This document shows, in pieces, positions 27,332 through 59,914 of a stretch of 64,000 nt of DNA. The notes beneath the pieces are model-generated. The model was not told the DNA's origin, made no database searches, and was given only the letters and a program-made list of their open reading frames with translations. Where the stretch lies: IMG/VR virus record IMGVR_UViG_3300020172_001601, positions 248,001 through 312,000 of that record. One strand, written 5' to 3'. Each line of letters opens with the position of its first letter. Positions within the stretch are counted from its first letter, which is position 1. Position numbers and translations under genes: made by a program.

Positions 27332-27355
27332 GGGGATCGCTTCCTCTTGTGTGGC

Positions 27356-27502
27356 ACGGCGGTACTTTAATGGCAGAAGGCGGCTCCAAGCAAGGTTCGA
27401 GTCCTTCTTAGGCTGGAGTTCTGGAGAGTTAGCTACTCTTTGGACCTCCCCCTTTGCATGGAGTACGGGGCGGCAGTGCGGGTTCGACTCCCGCTCGCTG
27501 TG
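27356..27502 (+). ncRNA. tRNA-like RNA with expanded anticodon domain
   Basis: Acceptor ACGGCGG/TCGCTGT, D-arm CTTT-AATGGCA-GAAG, T-arm GCGGG-TTCGACT-CCCGC; ~95-nt structured middle region. Confidence 0.7.
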
Positions 27503-27561
27503 TTTTTAGGTCTGGTGTACCCTAGTGGGTGTTACGAAACTTTCCTTTTGGAGAACGAACT

Positions 27562-33772: not shown

Positions 33773-33966
33773 AGTCAAAATAAGTCACAACTATTGGTGG
33801 GAAAACGCAGTGTATTACAGGCGTTCCATCTGCGGCGGCAATATTCAGGTCTGGAACGGTCGAATATGGACTGATGCTGCCGAGTCCTGACTTATACTGA
33901 CTATTGCATACCCTTCTCCATAGGGAGTATGGGGAAGAAAGTCAGGTCTATTGTACCCTAGCCGGT

Positions 33967-34268
33967 GTAATCGCAAATTACAACACCCAGCACGGGTGGA
34001 ACGCCGAGAGCCACAGGAGTAAGCACAGAAAGCATCCTCGCTGCGAAAACAATCGAGGATCGACCCGGAATAAGCCGGTCAGACAGAGTGTGAAGGCAAG
34101 AGGGTAAGCCCCTCCCACAATATATCACTCTGAATCAGTGTGGCCACACTGAGTCTGATCGAACGAAGAAGGGCAGTGCCGAAACGACTGGACGGGCGAA
34201 AGTCAGTCACTTGCTGTTGCACAGTGCATCGAAGACCGAAGGGGACGCCCTTCGGTTTTTCTTTTTTC
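33967..34268 (+). ncRNA. Candidate structured ncRNA (~300 nt)
   Basis: Lies between the motif and a terminator; no convincing ORF; at least 6 hairpins. Confidence 0.55.
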
Positions 34269-34325
34269 ATTTTGTTTAGGTCTATTGTACCCTAGCTGGC
34301 ACAACCCCTAACGAAAGGCAATGCG

Positions 34326-38512: not shown

Positions 38513-38644
38513 TACAACGCAGACTAGGCCAGTCTGCGGGGGAGCCAACGAGCGGCTATGCCAAGCAGGAAACTCCCCTGAAATCACAGGTCCAGTGTAC
38601 CCTGGTGGGTGTGAATAACACCCACCACTTCTAAGGAATGCGAG

Positions 38645-38872
38645 TTGACTTACCAAGAATTGAAAGCAAAGGTCAGTGCAGCACTTGGCGACGTTGGATT
38701 TTCCATCGAAGCGACGGACGACGGCCAGTTGGTCATTTATACCGACTTGAAAGAAGTCGAAGATCAGGACGAACTGGAGAACTACGAGCCGACGAATGAA
38801 CCCTTGGAATCATTGGACGACTTTCTGAGAGAAGAGTTGGGCGACAAAGACGCTTCCCTGTTTCTCAAGTAG
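38645..38872 (+). CDS. Small acidic protein
   Basis: AAGGA RBS, TTG start; stop is the motif TAG. Confidence 0.65.
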   Translation: MTYQELKAKVSAALGDVGFSIEATDDGQLVIYTDLKEVEDQDELENYEPTNEPLESLDDFLREELGDKDASLFLK

Positions 38873-38926
38873 GTCCAGTGTACCCTAGTGGGTGTAACGA
38901 ACAACCTCAACACGGAGAACTCTGCG

Positions 38927-39157
38927 ATGGCTATTACGCTGACCCCTTCCTATGGTCGTGACTACAAGAACGGCAAAGAAGTCCAAGAAGCCTGGGACGC
39001 TGGCAAGGACTTCACGATCAACTCCATCGGCCACCCGGACGATGGGCGGCAGATCAACAAGCAGGACGCCGAACGTGAGGGCGGCACCTTCAACATCCGG
39101 TACAAAAAACTGACCCAGATCAAGGTCATCAAGGTCAAGAAGGTCGCTGCGGCTTAG
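38927..39157 (+). CDS. Conserved phage hypothetical protein (PxYGRDYK...W..GKDF)
   Basis: GGAG RBS; stop is the motif TAG. Confidence 0.75.
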   Translation: MAITLTPSYGRDYKNGKEVQEAWDAGKDFTINSIGHPDDGRQINKQDAEREGGTFNIRYKKLTQIKVIKVKKVAAA

Positions 39158-39178
39158 GTCCAGTGTACCTTACACAGT

Positions 39179-39435
39179 GTAACGCCTCCCAAACATCGGC
39201 CTTGGGCAAGCCAATCAATCAGAATAAAGGAACCCCTTCCCATGAATGTCTGAAGTCCGCTAACTCCCCGGCGTAGTCATCCACGTTAGAGCGGGGCGGG
39301 ACTGCAAAGCGATGGCCGCACGTCAGCAATGGGCAGCATTGTGCTGGCTGACGTGTGAATGAAGTGCCTCCCAAACATTGGCCTTGGGCAAGCCGAAAGC
39401 AAATGCGTAGGGCAGGACCAACCTGCCCTTTTTTT
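39179..39435 (+). ncRNA. Candidate ncRNA bracketed by two 29-nt direct repeats
   Basis: gcctcccaaacatYggccttgggcaagcc at 39184 and 39366; terminator at 39410-39435. Confidence 0.6.
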
Positions 39436-39490
39436 GTTTTTGTTTGTGTAGGTCTATTGTACCCTAGAGGGTGTAACAAGCGAACAACAT

Positions 39491-39628
39491 GGCGGCGTAG
39501 CTCAACTGGCTAGAGCAACCATCATTATCGTAGCGATTGATCGGGGGTCCACGGTCAATGCGGCCAACGTGTGTACAGCGTTGGTTTGAGAGGATGGGAA
39601 GACGGGGGTTCGATGCCCTCCGCTGTCT
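39491..39628 (+). ncRNA. tRNA-like RNA with ~70-nt insert replacing the anticodon loop
   Basis: GGCGGCG/CGCTGTC acceptor, GCTC-AACTGGCTA-GAGC D-arm, CCATC/GATGG stem, GGGGG-TTCGATG-CCCTC T-arm. Confidence 0.75.
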
Positions 39629-39743
39629 GCTTACACTGTAGGGCATTTGCCCGAACAACGAGGCGTCAGAACACGCCTACAACCCCGAAAGGGGAGAGAG
39701 TGTAAGGTAGCCGTAGTGTACCCTAGTGGGCAGGAGAACAACA

Positions 39744-39902
39744 ATGCGAAAAACTGAAGGGGCAACCAAAGCCCACGCCTCTGTCGGGTATCACAAACAC
39801 CTTCGACCATTCGGCAAGCGACTGGCGAACAAAGCCACTCGCAAGAATGGCAAGCGTAGCACCAGTGTACCCTATGGGGCAGGAGACAAACATGGAAATT
39901 GA
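39744..39902 (+). CDS. Small basic protein reading through the motif (STSVP)
   Basis: AGGAG RBS. Confidence 0.55.
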   Translation: MRKTEGATKAHASVGYHKHLRPFGKRLANKATRKNGKRSTSVPYGAGDKHGN

Positions 39903-40263
39903 AGACGTGCGAAATACCCGATCCATGAGAATGGACCCGGAAAGCCCTGCGGAATACGACGAGATGGACGCCATCACCGCTGGCCCCAATGGTATGAAAT
40001 TGATGCCAGTGTTCAGCGGTGAGATGTTTCAACAGTCCGTTGCCTATCCCGTCATCGTGGAAGCATGGGACAAGAAGAACAGCGGACGCCACAAACGCCG
40101 ATGGGAAGCGACATTCACCCAAGCCGAACGGAACAAGATCAGCCGGTATTATGGCCGGTTTTACCGCTGGTATCTGGTCAGCGGCACGCCCAAACGTGTG
40201 TCACTGCAATTGAACACCTTGACCCTCCTGCAAAGGGCAGTGAACTTCTTCGCTGAATGTTAG
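39892..40263 (+). CDS. Hypothetical cassette protein
   Basis: AGGAG RBS; stop is the motif TAG. Confidence 0.75.
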   Translation: MEIEDVRNTRSMRMDPESPAEYDEMDAITAGPNGMKLMPVFSGEMFQQSVAYPVIVEAWDKKNSGRHKRRWEATFTQAERNKISRYYGRFYRWYLVSGTPKRVSLQLNTLTLLQRAVNFFAEC

Positions 40264-40284
40264 GGCTAGTGTACCCTAGAGGGC

Positions 40285-40578
40285 ATGATGAAAGACGCAT
40301 ACGGAAACGATCAAGTATATCTGGTCCAGCCCACAACTCTGGACTATGAGATCAGCTATGGTGGCGATGGTGTCAAAACATGCCAAGAGGGACGCTATCG
40401 ACACTATTTCACTGCCAGTGCTGGCGGTTTGTCGGGTAGCATTAGAATTCAATTGAACCGAGTCAGCGCCGAACGGTTTGCTGCCTATAACGGCCTGCGG
40501 TTGATAACCGACGTTGAACGTGAAGAAATTCAAGAAAGGTGGAGCGTCAGAGTGCCGGATTGGTCCAGTGTACCCTAG
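40285..40578 (+). CDS. Hypothetical protein (predicted leaderless)
   Basis: ATG exactly 7 nt after TACCCT; ends SSVP inside the next motif. Confidence 0.7.
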   Translation: MMKDAYGNDQVYLVQPTTLDYEISYGGDGVKTCQEGRYRHYFTASAGGLSGSIRIQLNRVSAERFAAYNGLRLITDVEREEIQERWSVRVPDWSSVP

Positions 40579-42434: not shown

Positions 42435-42662
42435 ATGAAGACCGAACCGAAGACGTTCCGCTTGGGCAGCAACGACATGGTTTCTGCCCCCGGCATCCTC
42501 AAGTGGGCCATGAATGGCTACAAATTCAAACGTGACCGCAAGAAGATGGTCAACGTGATGAAAGCGTGGGAGGGCCTGACCGATGCCCAATGGGGCAAGG
42601 TGCTGGCGGGTGAAATCCCCCACACCATCGAAGGCGATGTCGTGGTAATCACCATCGAATGA
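42435..42662 (+). CDS. Hypothetical cassette protein
   Basis: Followed by a terminator at 42668-42697. Confidence 0.7.
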   Translation: MKTEPKTFRLGSNDMVSAPGILKWAMNGYKFKRDRKKMVNVMKAWEGLTDAQWGKVLAGEIPHTIEGDVVVITIE

Positions 42663-42755
42663 CAACAAAGGGCAGCAAGTCGCTGCCCTTTTCTTTTATG
42701 TTTTTGTGTAGGTCTATTGTACCCTAGTGGGTGTCACACAAAGGAGACAATTGCG

Positions 42756-52775: not shown

Positions 52776-53241
52776 AATCCCAGGGCGGGACGGGATGTTT
52801 ATCGGCCCACAGGCCCAGCTTATGGCTTTTGGCGTATTCTTGTGCCTCGGCCATTTCCGGTGAATGAGAATAATCCGTATAGTGCCATGCCCAGCCTTCC
52901 TCGATCATTTCCTTGTTGATGTACCTGCCATTCAAATAGACCTTGCCGATAACTCGACCATATCGGTCTTTTTTGGTCCATTCCACTTTGACGTATTTGC
53001 CGAATATTTTCTCGCTGAGTGCTTCTTTGGCTTTGGTTCCGAATGGCTGTTTCTTTTCGGGACAGTCGATTTCGGCCAAGCGAACCTTCATTTGAGTTTT
53101 GTCAGGCTGCAATACTGTGATGGTATCGCCATCGGATATGCCTACAACATTCCCTGGGTCGGAAATAGAAAGACATATCCAAATCACTGGAATGAACGAA
53201 AGTATGGCAAGAACATAAACCGTCTTATACAGTTTGCTCAT
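52762..53241 (-). CDS. Thermonuclease (SNase family)
   Basis: DGDTI, VRLAEIDCPE, QPFG, DRYGR, GLW. Confidence 0.92.
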   Translation of the reverse strand: MSKLYKTVYVLAILSFIPVIWICLSISDPGNVVGISDGDTITVLQPDKTQMKVRLAEIDCPEKKQPFGTKAKEALSEKIFGKYVKVEWTKKDRYGRVIGKVYLNGRYINKEMIEEGWAWHYTDYSHSPEMAEAQEYAKSHKLGLWADKHPVPPWDFRKK

Positions 53242-54341
53242 TAGTTGATCCTAACGAAATCACGGCGTCCACATTGAACGACTTGCCCTGATTGCAGCAA
53301 CAATTGTTCATCAAAGACTTTGGTGCCGTCTACTTTGACGGCTCCATCTTTAAGTCTTTGTCGGGCAGCGGTTTTCGAGATATTGCAACAGGCAACTACG
53401 GCACTCAATAGCGAAGAGGCCGGTAGTGTAGGAATATCTGGAGGCAGTTCTTTGTTCTGCACGGTCTTGAGGAAGTGTTCCTGAGCCGCCTGAGCGACTT
53501 GTAGTGTGTGTAGTTGATTCACGATCTCGACGGCAAGAATCTTCTTCTTGTCCATCGGATGAATATCCTCGACTGTGAAATCTACAAATAAAGGGAACCA
53601 TTCCTGCATGACGGCATCAGGAATAGACATGACCTTCCCAAATACGTCATTAGGGTCTTCATCGAAGAAGATGCAGTTGTCCAGGCTCTTGCTCATCTTT
53701 CTGCCATCTGTGCCATTGATGATGGGCATCATGATGCAAGACTGAGGTTTCTGTCCGTTGGCTTCTTGTAGATGCCGGGCGACTTGAAAGTTAAACAATT
53801 GATCCTGCCCGCCGATTTCGATTTCAGATCGGAGGGCAACACTATCCCAGCCTTGGCAGATAGGGACCAAGAGTTCGTGCATACCAATAGATTGCTGATT
53901 GGCAATACGATCTTGGAAGGCGTTACGGCTGGTCATGTGCGAGAGTGTGAACTTTGCCACCTGTTTCATAAAGGTGGGAAGTGTCATCTGATTATGCAGC
54001 CAACCATTTTTACATATGGTCCATTTTCCTGGGGATTCTGGCCCGAAGTTATCGTTGCCAAGTATTTGCTTGATTTGCACGAAGATGGATTCGGCGTTGG
54101 CTTCAACATCATCTTCAGCCAATATTGGCCGGGTTGTATCACGACCAGAAGGGTCGCCGAGTTGGGCTGTGAAAGTTCCCAATACGATTGTGAGTTGATG
54201 CCCTTCTTGCATCATCTTTTTGGCGAGACGTAGCGGCACAAGATGCCCCAAATGCAAACGGGGGAAGGTCGGGTCGATCCCAAACTTCACCCGTTTGCAA
54301 GGGGGCAAATCGGCATTTTCAGGAAATACTTGAAAAGCCAT
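53241..54341 (-). CDS. tyrS: Tyrosyl-tRNA synthetase
   Basis: GIDPT, HLGH, GGQDQ, KMSKS and a C-terminal S4-like domain. Confidence 0.93.
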   Translation of the reverse strand: MAFQVFPENADLPPCKRVKFGIDPTFPRLHLGHLVPLRLAKKMMQEGHQLTIVLGTFTAQLGDPSGRDTTRPILAEDDVEANAESIFVQIKQILGNDNFGPESPGKWTICKNGWLHNQMTLPTFMKQVAKFTLSHMTSRNAFQDRIANQQSIGMHELLVPICQGWDSVALRSEIEIGGQDQLFNFQVARHLQEANGQKPQSCIMMPIINGTDGRKMSKSLDNCIFFDEDPNDVFGKVMSIPDAVMQEWFPLFVDFTVEDIHPMDKKKILAVEIVNQLHTLQVAQAAQEHFLKTVQNKELPPDIPTLPASSLLSAVVACCNISKTAARQRLKDGAVKVDGTKVFDEQLLLQSGQVVQCGRRDFVRIN

Positions 54342-58297: not shown

Positions 58298-59914
58298 TTA
58301 TTCGTCGTCTTCTGGTGATGGAGAACCTGAAGGAGCGGCGGGTTTGCCGCCACCACTCTTCAGCTTGTTCAGACTGTCCTTCCAACGCTGAGTTGAAAGA
58401 TTTCGTTTGACGGAATCGAACTCGCTGCCTTGTGGCGCACGTCCCAGGAACTTCGTATATTCTGGGTTGACGGTTCTTTTGCCATCAGCACCCTGCGAAT
58501 ATGGTGTCAAATCTTTGTCGTCATGAGCTAAGAAGTTATCGACTTCTGGACCGTGAGCTTTGGCCATCTGCATCCATTCACGAATCTTGCTCTTGGTCAA
58601 ACCTGTGTGTGCAGATTTCATGTCATAGAAGTCTTTAGGGTCGAACTTGTTCTTGGCTCCCCACTGATACAGCTTAACCAAATAAGCAATATCTCCAGAC
58701 TCTTGCTTGGACCAACCGCCACCAGTCAACATTTTCTTGACATCTTCTGGATCGTTATTGCGAAGAACCCAGGCCGGAGCCAACCAACGGTCGCCTCGGA
58801 AGTCTTCTGGCATTTGTTCTGGGTCAAAGTCAACACCTGGGAAAACACTATTGAGCAAACCAGTATTCTGGAATGCCTTCATGTATTTGCGAGGATCGCT
58901 ATCTGGATGTTCCAGACCGCTAAGGAATTCCTTACGAACTGTGTCCTTATCGACGCCATTCATGTCTTTGTGACGGGAGATAGATGCTTGATACTTTTCA
59001 GGAATCTTGTCGGAATTGCCATATCGTGTGACCATCTTCATATATCGCAGAGCGGTAGATGGGTCTTCTGACATGCGGGATTCCAGGTCGTCGCCAACAG
59101 CCTTAACTTCACCATTCTTCAAATGGTGAGCGCCACCGTGCGGGTCGATCAAGTCGCTATTGTCACCGTCCGCAGTCGTCAGCGGGATGTATAGTGAGTT
59201 AATCGTAAAGTCACGATTGGCTGAATCTTCTTCCACGGATGCGGCTGATTCACCCTTGTCAGGCTGAACTCGGCGGCTCTTAGAAGACTTAGAAAGGGTG
59301 GCAATAGAGAATTGTTCGCCGTTGATTTCGGCGGTTACTTCCAATTCTTTGCCTTGTTTGTCCCAGCGAGAAGCGTAGAAAATCTTGTTCTTAGTGCCTG
59401 GAGATGGAAGTTTTGCATATCTCTCGTCGCTGGCGTAGTCTCCTTCACGGGGCTTCGTTTCGGAAAACTGCGTTTCTAGCTGAGTCAGAATCATACGCAT
59501 TTCACTTGGCGTAGCATCTGTAACCAGATCGTAGTTACGAGGGGTCTTGCCCTTCAAATGGTCACGAACGGCACCACCTGTGAGGTACAATACCTTCTTT
59601 TTGAGGTTTGGCTCAACTTCACCCTTGGACTTATCAATCGTGGTGTAGCCTACTCCCACGTTCTGGGAGTCGGCAAATGCCTTGATAAGCACTCTAAGGT
59701 TAGGGTGCGTGGTTTTATTGATGGTAAACGGTGCGAATTCCTTGGAGCCTTCCTTCTTCTGCAATTTAATGCGTGAAGTGATGTTTCCGGCTCCTGGTTG
59801 ACCGCTACTACCGCTACTACCGCTGCCACCATTTCCACCGCTGGCCTCGCCTTCACTTGGCTTGGCTCCGGTTTCTTCTCTTAACTGAAAGTAACTTGCG
59901 AATAACTTTTTCAT
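58298..59914 (-). CDS. tRNA nucleotidyltransferase / poly(A) polymerase family protein
   Basis: GGAVRDHL, (N)YDLVTDA, RDFTINSL, EDP..ALR; first catalytic Asp appears to be Asn. Confidence 0.85.
   Translation of the reverse strand: MKKLFASYFQLREETGAKPSEGEASGGNGGSGSSGSSGQPGAGNITSRIKLQKKEGSKEFAPFTINKTTHPNLRVLIKAFADSQNVGVGYTTIDKSKGEVEPNLKKKVLYLTGGAVRDHLKGKTPRNYDLVTDATPSEMRMILTQLETQFSETKPREGDYASDERYAKLPSPGTKNKIFYASRWDKQGKELEVTAEINGEQFSIATLSKSSKSRRVQPDKGESAASVEEDSANRDFTINSLYIPLTTADGDNSDLIDPHGGAHHLKNGEVKAVGDDLESRMSEDPSTALRYMKMVTRYGNSDKIPEKYQASISRHKDMNGVDKDTVRKEFLSGLEHPDSDPRKYMKAFQNTGLLNSVFPGVDFDPEQMPEDFRGDRWLAPAWVLRNNDPEDVKKMLTGGGWSKQESGDIAYLVKLYQWGAKNKFDPKDFYDMKSAHTGLTKSKIREWMQMAKAHGPEVDNFLAHDDKDLTPYSQGADGKRTVNPEYTKFLGRAPQGSEFDSVKRNLSTQRWKDSLNKLKSGGGKPAAPSGSPSPEDDE

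What the first reader, a model, noticed from the sequence alone, without database searches (positions are those of the whole stretch)
39184..39394. ncRNA with two 29-nt direct repeats that could form small pseudoknots
Seen: gcctcccaaacat(c/t)ggccttgggcaagcc occurs twice, 182 nt apart, between a motif and a terminator. Each copy has a cccaa/ttggg stem whose loop GGC can pair with the downstream GCC. The interval contains cacgtcagc/gctgacgtg. Established: type III antitoxin RNAs are short repeated pseudoknots and phage mimics of them are known; solitary CRISPR-repeat mimics also exist. Inference: a protein-sponging anti-defence RNA.
Basis: partly seen in the sequence, partly recalled or inferred. 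Interest (0 to 1): 0.6.

Follow-up and report, generated by a model that had tools for sequence, protein, structure and literature searches.

The report
Orphan small RNA gene of a huge phage
The two 29-base repeats lie in a real, conserved and apparently expressed small non-coding RNA gene (about 250 nt) in the early region of an uncultured freshwater giant phage, but the conserved part is a central two-hairpin core rather than the repeats, and nothing tested links it to type III antitoxins or CRISPR-repeat mimics.

Summary
Two 29-nt direct repeats (28/29 identical) sit at 39184-39212 and 39366-39394. They lie between a variant of a phage promoter-like motif, present about 57 times in the window, and an intrinsic terminator.

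The unit has no conserved ORF and no Rfam match. It is found only in three closely related phage lineages.

Against the most divergent relative (L004), the 105-nt core (39255-39359) is 92% identical, while the spacers on either side are 30-45% identical. One stem shows a compensatory change. In two independent metatranscriptomes, the only contigs on a 1.7-kb stretch fall inside this unit.

The second repeat is missing in L004, so the repeat pair is lineage-specific. The 29-mer folds no better than shuffled sequence, and the proposed pseudoknot has no covariation support.

The repeats are not tandem. No ToxN gene, CRISPR array or CRISPR-like array carrying this repeat was found.

Best reading: an independently transcribed, stable, structured phage small RNA that probably acts in trans by binding a partner. 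The function is unknown, and the anti-defence sponge idea is untested.

Next to it lie a tRNA with a 62-71-nt conserved insert and, 5 kb upstream, a second ORF-less promoter-to-terminator unit.

The parts
39156..39182 (+). Variant copy of the promoter-like motif. The upstream half (GGTCCAGTGTACC) is kept and the downstream half is replaced.
   Evidence: Member of repeat family D1. The consensus motif occurs about 57 times, all on the + strand, between window 17.3 and 45 kb, each just upstream of a small gene. The core GTGTACCCTA is perfect in L003, L004 and X5. Promoter function is inferred, not shown. No T7-type RNA polymerase was found in the 69%-complete record.
39184..39212 (+). 29-nt repeat, copy 1: the conserved 5' module of the RNA, with possible CCCAA/UUGGG hairpin and 9-nt loop.
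   Evidence: It is present in all three lineages (L004 lacks one G). Among all copies seen, variation is confined to unit positions 13-14, in the loop.
39213..39253 (+). Variable spacer with an SD-like AAAGGA (39226-39231) and a three-codon mini-ORF (39242-39253).
   Evidence: 45% identity to L004. L004 nevertheless has ATG, two different codons and a stop at the same alignment columns, behind AAGGAG. The meaning is unknown.
39254..39303 (+). Core domain 1: outer stem AGUCC/GGACU enclosing an irregular hairpin (CCCCG GCGU ... ACGU ... CGGGG).
   Evidence: RNAalifold consensus. Pair 39255/39302 is G-C in the window and L003 and A-U in L004, a compensatory change. A 46-nt block is identical in L004. 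An alternative pairing, CCGCUAAC/GUUAGAGCGG, is equally conserved and cannot be excluded.
39317..39357 (+).
   Evidence: MFE -22.2 kcal/mol, z = -3.45. The 8-bp central stem is kept in L004, and its changes fall in the apical loop and at the helix ends.
39366..39394 (+). 29-nt repeat, copy 2: a lineage-specific 3' copy.
   Evidence: It is present in L003/L012/L013 and in the relative seen in run X5, but absent in L004/L014, where unrelated sequence takes its place.
39409..39436 (+). Intrinsic terminator.
   Evidence: 8-bp stem (6 G-C pairs), 5-nt loop and a T7 run. Conserved in L003 and L004. T-runs of 6 or more are rare in this gene array, with six found in 28 kb.
39450..39706 (+). Adjacent unit (context only): promoter motif 39450-39477, a tRNA with a 62-71-nt insert at 39491-39628, and a structured 3' trailer at 39629-39706.
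   Evidence: Rfam tRNA model, 32.5 bits, with 71 nt in place of the 7-nt anticodon loop. Two compensatory pairs against L004. The insert is 92% and the trailer 89% identical to L004.

Best explanation
The interval is the body of an independently transcribed, stable small non-coding RNA gene. It runs from roughly 39178 to 39432 on the + strand, about 250 nt, in the early-type gene array of an uncultured freshwater/sediment huge phage (a record of at least 340 kb). The RNA is modular. It has a conserved 29-nt 5' module directly behind the promoter-like motif, a fast-evolving spacer, a strongly constrained 105-nt core of two hairpin domains, and an intrinsic terminator. In one lineage (the window, L003 and the relative seen in run X5) a second copy of the 5' module lies between the core and the terminator, and this creates the direct repeat. 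Inferred mechanism: the RNA accumulates early in infection and acts in trans as a structured RNA that binds a partner. A protein partner is more likely than an mRNA, because about 100 nt of mostly base-paired sequence is conserved rather than a short single-stranded seed. The 29-nt module would serve as a 5' (and, where duplicated, 3') recognition or stabilising hairpin. The gene, its conservation and its presence in RNA libraries are shown. The transcription start, the ends, the partner and any anti-defence role are inferred or unknown.
For: Anatomy: a variant promoter-like motif, no conserved ORF, and a terminator. The motif heads about 57 small genes on the same strand.

Conservation against L004: core 92%, 5' module 28 of 29 bases kept (one G deleted), spacer 45%, 3' region 30%, upstream coding sequence 86%.

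Conservation among close relatives: the core is 100% identical in L003, and there are no changes between 39197 and 39378 in the relative in run X5. Flanking genes in those relatives carry 3-6% substitutions.

Structure: one compensatory pair in the outer stem of core domain 1, and a hairpin z-score of -3.45.

Expression: two metatranscriptome runs from different studies (wastewater and freshwater) each hold a single contig on the 1.7 kb laid, at 39209-39358 and 39199-39378. Both runs have zero coverage of the flanking genes.

Uniqueness: single copy in the genome and no Rfam family.
Against: Only three lineages carry the RNA. Covariation therefore rests on one pair, and the fold of core domain 1 is ambiguous. 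The whole-RNA folding energy is not better than shuffles (z = -0.47).

The RNA evidence comes from assembled contigs, which give no strand, ends or abundance, and DNA carry-over in RNA libraries cannot be fully excluded. The contig ends coincide with polymorphic sites and are not RNA ends.

Promoter function of the motif is inferred, and no matching RNA polymerase was found. No partner has been identified.
Confidence: 0.55

Rival explanations
1. A base-pairing regulatory small RNA of the Hfq-dependent type. The conserved 5' end (which contains CCUCCC, an anti-Shine-Dalgarno-like string, in each copy) would pair with ribosome-binding sites of host or phage mRNAs, and the terminator with its U-tail would serve as the chaperone-binding module.
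For: The 5' module sits immediately behind the promoter-like motif and is conserved in all lineages. The unit has an intrinsic terminator with a U7 tail. The CCUCCC string is read directly from the sequence.
Against: The strongest constraint is on the structured 105-nt core, not on a short single-stranded seed. The best antisense matches in the 340-kb phage record are at chance level (E = 0.07-2.9). Duplex energies against the neighbouring RNAs are no better than shuffles. The host is unknown, so host targets were not tested.
Confidence: 0.15
2. Not an independent gene: a structured 3' UTR or processing product of the upstream 76-aa gene's mRNA, or a leader of the downstream tRNA precursor. 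It would act in cis as a stabiliser, insulator or terminator cassette.
For: The promoter motif copy deviates from the consensus in its downstream half. Abundant 3'UTR-derived ncRNAs are documented in virulent phages (PAK_P3 ncRNA1/2; PMC10914365). The unit is followed 20 nt later by a tRNA unit.
Against: The upstream half of the motif, its most invariant part, is kept in all lineages. The RNA-library contigs do not extend into the upstream coding sequence. A simple stabiliser or terminator would not need a 105-nt, nearly invariant core.
Confidence: 0.12
3. An RNA anti-CRISPR (Racr, solitary repeat unit) or CRISPR-like regulatory RNA. Each 29-nt module would mimic a host CRISPR repeat and titrate Cas6 or Cas7-type proteins.
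For: The unit is 29 nt long with a hairpin in its 3' half. Copy 1 lies immediately downstream of a promoter-like motif, as described for solitary repeat units (PMC10651486). No cas genes were noticed nearby; the 10 neighbouring ORFs gave no informative Pfam or PHROG match.
Against: No CRISPR array carries this repeat. A 19-specified-base pattern gave 4 single hits in 596 Gb of species genomes, about the number expected by chance. A looser 16-base pattern gave only single unrelated hits in IMG/VR. The 153-nt spacing is not array-like. The module is embedded in a longer RNA whose core is the most conserved part. The 9-nt loop and weak fold are atypical for Cas6-type repeats. The scans were for exact patterns only, so a diverged repeat family could have been missed.
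Confidence: 0.05
4. A type III antitoxin mimic (pseudo-ToxI). The repeats would be processed by, and would neutralise, a host ToxN/AbiQ/CptN-type endoribonuclease.
For: Short repeated units with pseudoknot potential, read from the sequence. Phage pseudo-ToxI is a known precedent (PMC3475682, found; summarised in PMC5086642).
Against: Type III antitoxins and their phage mimics are head-to-tail tandem arrays. Here there are two copies 182 nt apart and no tandem array. One lineage has a single copy. No ToxN-family gene is in the record. The pseudoknot is not supported.
Confidence: 0.02
5. A minigene or ribosome-loading RNA. The conserved feature of the spacer would be a three-codon ORF behind a Shine-Dalgarno-like site, which loads ribosomes or sequesters peptidyl-tRNA, as the lambda bar minigenes do (own knowledge).
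For: ATG plus two codons plus a stop occupy the same alignment columns in the window and L004, although all six sense-codon bases differ. An SD-like site lies 10-11 nt upstream in both.
Against: There are only two independent lineages, and chance retention is a few per cent, which is not negligible. The SD spacing is long. This reading does not explain the conserved core.
Confidence: 0.05

Closest known systems
Abundant phage-encoded ncRNAs of unknown function in virulent and jumbo phages (PAK_P3 ncRNA1 at about 210 nt and ncRNA2 at about 120 nt; phiKZ ncRNA candidates; PMC10914365). From my own knowledge, also the T4 stable RNAs rnaC/rnaD in its tRNA gene cluster.
   Same: A short, ORF-less, stable transcript of a lytic-type phage, conserved only among close relatives, with no assigned function. 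Like T4 rnaC/rnaD, it lies beside a tRNA gene.
   Different: There is no sequence or Rfam relationship. This RNA appears to have its own promoter-like motif and terminator rather than arising by UTR processing. It has a duplicated 29-nt module.
Racr / solitary repeat units (RNA anti-CRISPRs), PMC10651486
   Same: A short hairpin-containing unit of CRISPR-repeat length directly downstream of a promoter-like motif in a phage, with no cas genes noticed nearby.
   Different: No similarity to any CRISPR repeat was found. The unit is part of a 250-nt RNA with a more conserved, unrelated core. The two copies are 153 nt apart.
ToxI and phage pseudo-ToxI (type III antitoxin RNA), PMC5086642 and PMC3475682
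   Same: A repeated short RNA unit with conceivable pseudoknot pairing in a phage.
   Different: The repeats are not tandem, there are only two copies (one in a relative), no cognate toxin is known, and the pseudoknot is unsupported.
Lambda nut (boxB) and HK022 put RNA elements (own knowledge)
   Same: Small hairpin modules placed just downstream of early promoters and upstream of terminators. A 52-aa, very basic ORF lies 350 nt downstream, only in the lineages that have two modules.
   Different: There is no boxA/boxB or put similarity, and no evidence of read-through. Downstream genes have their own promoter-like motifs. This is a resemblance only and was not tested.

Membership tests
Type III antitoxin RNA / phage pseudo-ToxI | Head-to-tail tandem array of short (about 34-36 nt) repeats | tested here: not met
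   Two copies with start-to-start spacing of 182 nt. Tandem Repeats Finder finds no such array in 38800-39800. L004 has one copy. The definition is taken from PMC5086642.
Type III antitoxin RNA / phage pseudo-ToxI | Cognate ToxN/AbiQ/CptN-type endoribonuclease (adjacent in bacteria; in the host for a phage mimic) | tested here: not met
   No PF13958 match in the 340-kb record. The host is unknown, so a host toxin could not be examined.
Type III antitoxin RNA / phage pseudo-ToxI | Each repeat folds as a pseudoknot | tested here: inconclusive
   The pairing is possible on paper. The 29-mers fold no better than shuffles, with competing structures. No covariation is available.
Racr / solitary CRISPR repeat unit | Sequence and structure similarity to the repeats of a real CRISPR array | tested here: not met
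   Only single matches in GTDB species genomes, at about the number expected by chance, and single unrelated matches in IMG/VR. No locus has multiple copies. The scans used exact patterns, so sensitivity is limited.
Racr / solitary CRISPR repeat unit | Located just downstream of a promoter, not associated with cas genes | tested here: met
   Copy 1 starts 2 nt after the promoter-like motif. The 10 neighbouring ORFs gave no informative Pfam or PHROG match. No CRISPR-like array is in the record.
Any curated RNA family (Rfam 15) | Covariance-model match at or near the gathering score | tested here: not met
   No hit at gathering threshold in the window. With E up to 10 on 39140-39720, only terminator-driven noise falls on the ncRNA unit. 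The neighbouring tRNA matches.
Hfq-type trans-acting sRNA | Own promoter, intrinsic terminator with U-tail, and a conserved single-stranded seed with target complementarity | tested here: inconclusive
   The terminator is met and the promoter is inferred. No significant complementarity was found within the phage. The host is unknown.
Phage stable small RNA linked to tRNA genes (T4 rnaC/rnaD type) | Stable non-coding transcript adjacent to phage tRNA gene(s) | tested here: met
   A tRNA unit starts 60 nt downstream. The RNA-library contigs are restricted to the unit. Co-processing with the tRNA is not testable here.

The most novel reading that the evidence does not exclude
The RNA is a new kind of phage counter-defence or host-takeover decoy. 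Its invariant two-hairpin core and its one or two 29-nt hairpin modules, whose two loop positions vary between strains, would capture a host (or phage) RNA-binding protein early in infection. It may work together with the neighbouring insert-bearing tRNA and the small basic protein that co-occurs with the duplicated module.
Probability: 0.1. Interest if true: 0.75.

Novelty: new member of a known kind. Interest (0 to 1): 0.38.

Why it matters
Non-coding RNAs of huge uncultured phages are almost unexplored. This locus gives a concrete, conserved candidate that can be recovered from RNA libraries, in an unusually regular early-gene array where about 57 genes each have the same 27-nt upstream motif. 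It sits beside a tRNA with a conserved 62-71-nt insert and near a second ORF-less unit. If a partner were found, it could reveal a new RNA-based host-takeover or anti-defence mechanism. As it stands, it is an orphan phage small RNA, and the attractive analogies to ToxI and Racr should not be carried forward.

Tried and rejected
1. Rfam at gathering and permissive thresholds: nothing on the unit.
2. blastn against 50,697 phage records: no match.
3. Homologue hunts: four exact-pattern scans of IMG/VR for the RNA or the tRNA insert, two searches with the flanking proteins, and one metagenome scan. Together they recovered only two other lineages (L003/L012/L013 and L004/L014). The three other metagenome hits were chance matches inside unrelated sequence.
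4. Covariance model of the core against the phage's own record and four more distant relatives, one of them complete at 224 kb: only the query locus matched. Relatives that carry homologues of the flanking proteins (L006, L009-L011) lack both the motif and the RNA.
5. CRISPR-repeat test by pattern scans: chance-level single hits only. No CRISPR-like array in the record.
6. ToxN, RtcB, tRNA-splicing endonuclease and T7-type RNA polymerase families: all absent from the record. For the polymerase search the control genomes did not ring either, so that absence is weak.
7. RNA-RNA duplex search of the ncRNA against the tRNA unit and against the second ORF-less unit: no better than shuffles.
8. Antisense matches in the phage genome: chance level.
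9. A bulge-helix-bulge reading of the two repeats paired in trans was considered and dropped. The bulges would be 5 nt long and staggered the opposite way from the archaeal motif (the motif's geometry is from my own knowledge), no splicing endonuclease was found, and L004 lacks the second copy.
10. A coding reading was rejected. The ORFs across the unit are short, cross the terminator, or are frameshifted in L004.

Full report
**Observation.** The 29-nt unit occurs at 39184-39212 and 39366-39394 (28/29 identical, start-to-start spacing 182 nt). No further copy with 9 or fewer mismatches exists on either strand of the whole 340,341-bp virus record that contains the window. Each copy contains CCCAA ... 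UUGGG around a 9-nt loop that includes GGCC, followed by CAA and GCC. All statements of the observation are therefore literally correct.

**Genomic setting.** The window is part of an IMG/VR record of 340 kb, estimated 69% complete.
- The record carries 52 canonical tRNA genes, including two with anticodon CUA.
- It carries a class I Trp/Tyr-type aminoacyl-tRNA synthetase and a CCA-adding-type nucleotidyltransferase, and an RNA ligase.
- The nearest isolated phage, judged by a helicase, is Tunturiibacter phage Tunturi_5 at 39% amino-acid identity.
- Between window 17.3 and 45 kb, a 27-nt motif (consensus close to TAGGTCCAGTGTACCCTAGTGGGTGTAAC) occurs about 57 times, always on the + strand. Only 1.3 matches are expected by chance. 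Almost every copy lies 15-45 nt upstream of a small ORF.
- I read the motif as a phage promoter, but that is an inference. No T7-type polymerase was found in the record, and that search's controls were silent.

**The transcription unit.** The unit starts with a variant of the motif at 39156-39182 whose invariant upstream half is intact. In L003, L004 and the relative in run X5 the core GTGTACCCTA is perfect. It ends at an intrinsic terminator (39409-39429 plus T7), one of only six T-runs of 6 or more in the 28-kb array. No ORF across the unit is conserved. The longest ORFs cross the terminator or are frameshifted in a relative.

**Relatives.** Exact-pattern scans of IMG/VR and of JGI metagenomes, and searches with both flanking proteins, recovered only two other lineages.
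- L003/L012/L013 is about 97% identical, and L013 comes from a separate sample.
- L004/L014 is about 79-82% identical.
- More distant phages that carry homologues of the flanking proteins have neither the motif nor the RNA. A covariance model of the core found nothing in them, including a complete 224-kb genome.
- No phage in the GenBank-derived collection matches, and no Rfam family matches.

**What is conserved.** Identity against L004 (5' module):

| Segment | Identity to L004 |
|---|---|
| 5' module (repeat copy 1) | 28/29 bases kept (one G deleted) |
| Spacer 39213-39254 | 45% |
| Core 39255-39359 | 92% |
| Region from core to terminator | 30% |
| Upstream coding sequence | 86% |

- The second repeat copy is absent in L004, where unrelated sequence takes its place.
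- Within the close cluster the core has no change at all. It is 100% identical in L003, and there are no changes from 39197 to 39378 in the X5 relative. The flanking genes in those relatives carry 3-6% substitutions.
- Selection therefore acts mainly on the central core and the 5' module. The repeat pair as such is lineage-specific.
- The only positions that vary among all observed copies of the 29-mer are unit positions 13 and 14 in the loop: U/A and C/U.

**Structure.**
- RNAalifold on the three sequences gives four elements: a hairpin in the 5' module, a first core domain, a long second hairpin, and the terminator.
- The first core domain has an outer stem 39254-39258/39299-39303 enclosing an irregular hairpin. 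The second hairpin spans 39317-39357.
- The outer stem shows one compensatory change, G-C to A-U at 39255/39302.
- The long hairpin is the only element clearly better than shuffled sequence (z = -3.45).
- Core domain 1 has an equally conserved alternative pairing (CCGCUAAC with GUUAGAGCGG) that cannot be excluded with so few sequences.
- The whole RNA does not fold better than shuffles (z = -0.47).
- The isolated 29-mers do not either (z = +0.5), and they have competing pairings.
- The pseudoknot is possible on paper but has no support.

**Expression.** Of 23 runs listed, 20 hold at least part of the stretch, from 13 studies of freshwater, sediment and wastewater. Two are metatranscriptomes from different studies.
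- When 1.7 kb (38600-40300) was laid on them, each RNA run gave a single contig, at 39209-39358 and 39199-39378. Both lie inside the unit, and neither run covered the flanking genes at all.
- The two DNA runs laid (X5, X2) covered 26 and 27 of the 30 depth bins across the stretch.
- This argues for a stable, relatively abundant RNA.
- It does not give the strand, the ends or the level. The contig ends coincide with polymorphic sites (39196/39197 and 39379), where assembly graphs break, so they are not RNA ends.
- The freshwater RNA contig is a further variant whose differences all fall in the spacer.

- *Type III antitoxins* are tandem arrays of short repeats processed by an adjacent toxin (PMC5086642). 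Here there is no tandem array, one relative has a single copy, and no ToxN-family gene is present.
- *Racrs* are defined by similarity to CRISPR repeats and often lie just behind a promoter (PMC10651486). The position criterion is met. However, scans of 185,579 species genomes and of IMG/VR returned only single matches: about the number expected by chance in the genomes, and all in unrelated sequence in IMG/VR. The record contains no CRISPR-like array.
- The module is also embedded in a longer RNA whose unrelated core is the most constrained part.
- The specific mimic hypotheses are therefore not supported. A generic protein-binding role remains possible but untested.

**Most likely mechanism.**
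- Shown: a discrete, conserved, ORF-less unit with a terminator that is present in RNA libraries.
- Inferred: it has its own promoter, it accumulates early, and it acts in trans.
- About 100 nt of largely paired sequence is conserved rather than a short open seed. No significant antisense target exists in the phage. I therefore favour a partner-binding structured RNA (decoy, scaffold or cofactor) over a base-pairing small RNA. I put this reading, the gene and the trans-acting binding role together, at about 0.55. The existence of the RNA gene is much better supported than the binding role.
- The 5' hairpin module could simply stabilise the 5' end. Its near-invariance outside two loop positions suggests specific recognition instead.

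**Unexplained details.**
- The spacer holds a three-codon ORF behind an SD-like site. Its start and stop are at the same alignment columns in L004, although the codons between differ completely.
- A 52-aa, very basic ORF (39745-39902) is present only in the lineages that have the second repeat copy.

**Verdict.** This is a real feature: an orphan phage small RNA, a new member of a known but poorly understood kind. The interpretation as an antitoxin or CRISPR-repeat mimic is not supported.

Noticed in passing
window 17342-45018 (+ strand): About 57 copies of a 27-nt motif (consensus close to TAGGTCCAGTGTACCCTAGTGGGTGTAAC) lie upstream of small ORFs, all in one orientation (a few lie inside or overlap an upstream ORF). 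They contain a small CCC/GGG hairpin with a variable loop. The TAG at the 5' edge of the motif often serves as the stop codon of the upstream gene. A sub-variant (GGTCTATTGTACC) follows the terminators at 34262 and 39429 (it also occurs elsewhere) and heads the two neighbouring RNA units. No literature hit for the motif and no T7-type RNA polymerase in the record.
   Followed up: partly
window 33951-34270 (+): A second promoter-to-terminator unit without an ORF, about 290 nt, with a terminator hairpin and T-run around 34237-34270. It is 98.9% identical in L003 and 85% in L014, higher than the neighbouring coding sequence (74-80%). No Rfam hit. Probably another phage ncRNA gene.
   Followed up: partly
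window 39491-39628 (+), trailer 39629-39706: A tRNA whose anticodon loop is replaced by 71 nt (Rfam tRNA, 32.5 bits). ARAGORN with introns allowed reads tRNA-Leu(GAG) with a 62-nt insert right after the 5' strand of the anticodon stem. By my reading, the L004 orthologue would have anticodon AAG, also Leu. The insert forms a branched structure, is more conserved than the exons (92% against L004), and is far too short for a group I intron. No RtcB or splicing endonuclease is in the record. The 3' trailer forms three small hairpins closed by an 8-bp stem.
   Followed up: partly
window 39745-39902 (+): A 52-aa, very basic ORF behind a strong AGGAG site. It is present in the window and L003 (the lineages with two repeat copies) but absent in L004 (one copy). 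No Pfam or PHROG match. It is a possible RNA-binding partner, but the correlation rests on two lineages.
   Followed up: no
window 39242-39253 (+): A three-codon mini-ORF (ATG, two codons, stop) 10-11 nt behind an SD-like site. Its start and stop are at the same alignment columns in L004, although both sense codons differ.
   Followed up: partly
G000 72800-101233, 182011-182084, 182708-182778 (outside the window): 52 canonical tRNA genes in the phage record, mostly in one cluster, including two with anticodon CUA (amber-suppressor type, labelled Pyl by ARAGORN). I did not test whether TAG is recoded in any gene set. With introns allowed, ARAGORN also proposes several other insert-bearing tRNAs, for example at window 27355-27503 and G000 76158-76304.
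   Followed up: no
window 53241-54341 (-), 58298-59914 (-); G000 159336-159815: A class I Trp/Tyr-type aminoacyl-tRNA synthetase, a CCA-adding-type nucleotidyltransferase and an RNA ligase (PF09414). This phage is heavily invested in tRNA supply and repair.
   Followed up: no
G000 339576-339960 (record end, outside the window): A tandem array with 33/66-nt spacing at the very end of the record. It could be a terminal repeat region or an assembly artefact. It is not CRISPR-like.
   Followed up: no
window 42620-42698 (+): A sub-threshold Rfam match to DapZ (36.4 bits against a gathering score of 56, E = 0.002). It was not examined further.
   Followed up: no
sequencing runs X5-X13: DNA runs labelled with a single organism ('organism A') rather than a metagenome hold a relative of this region about 97% identical, at roughly 10x depth. 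This is a possible lead to the host or to a culture containing the phage.
   Followed up: no
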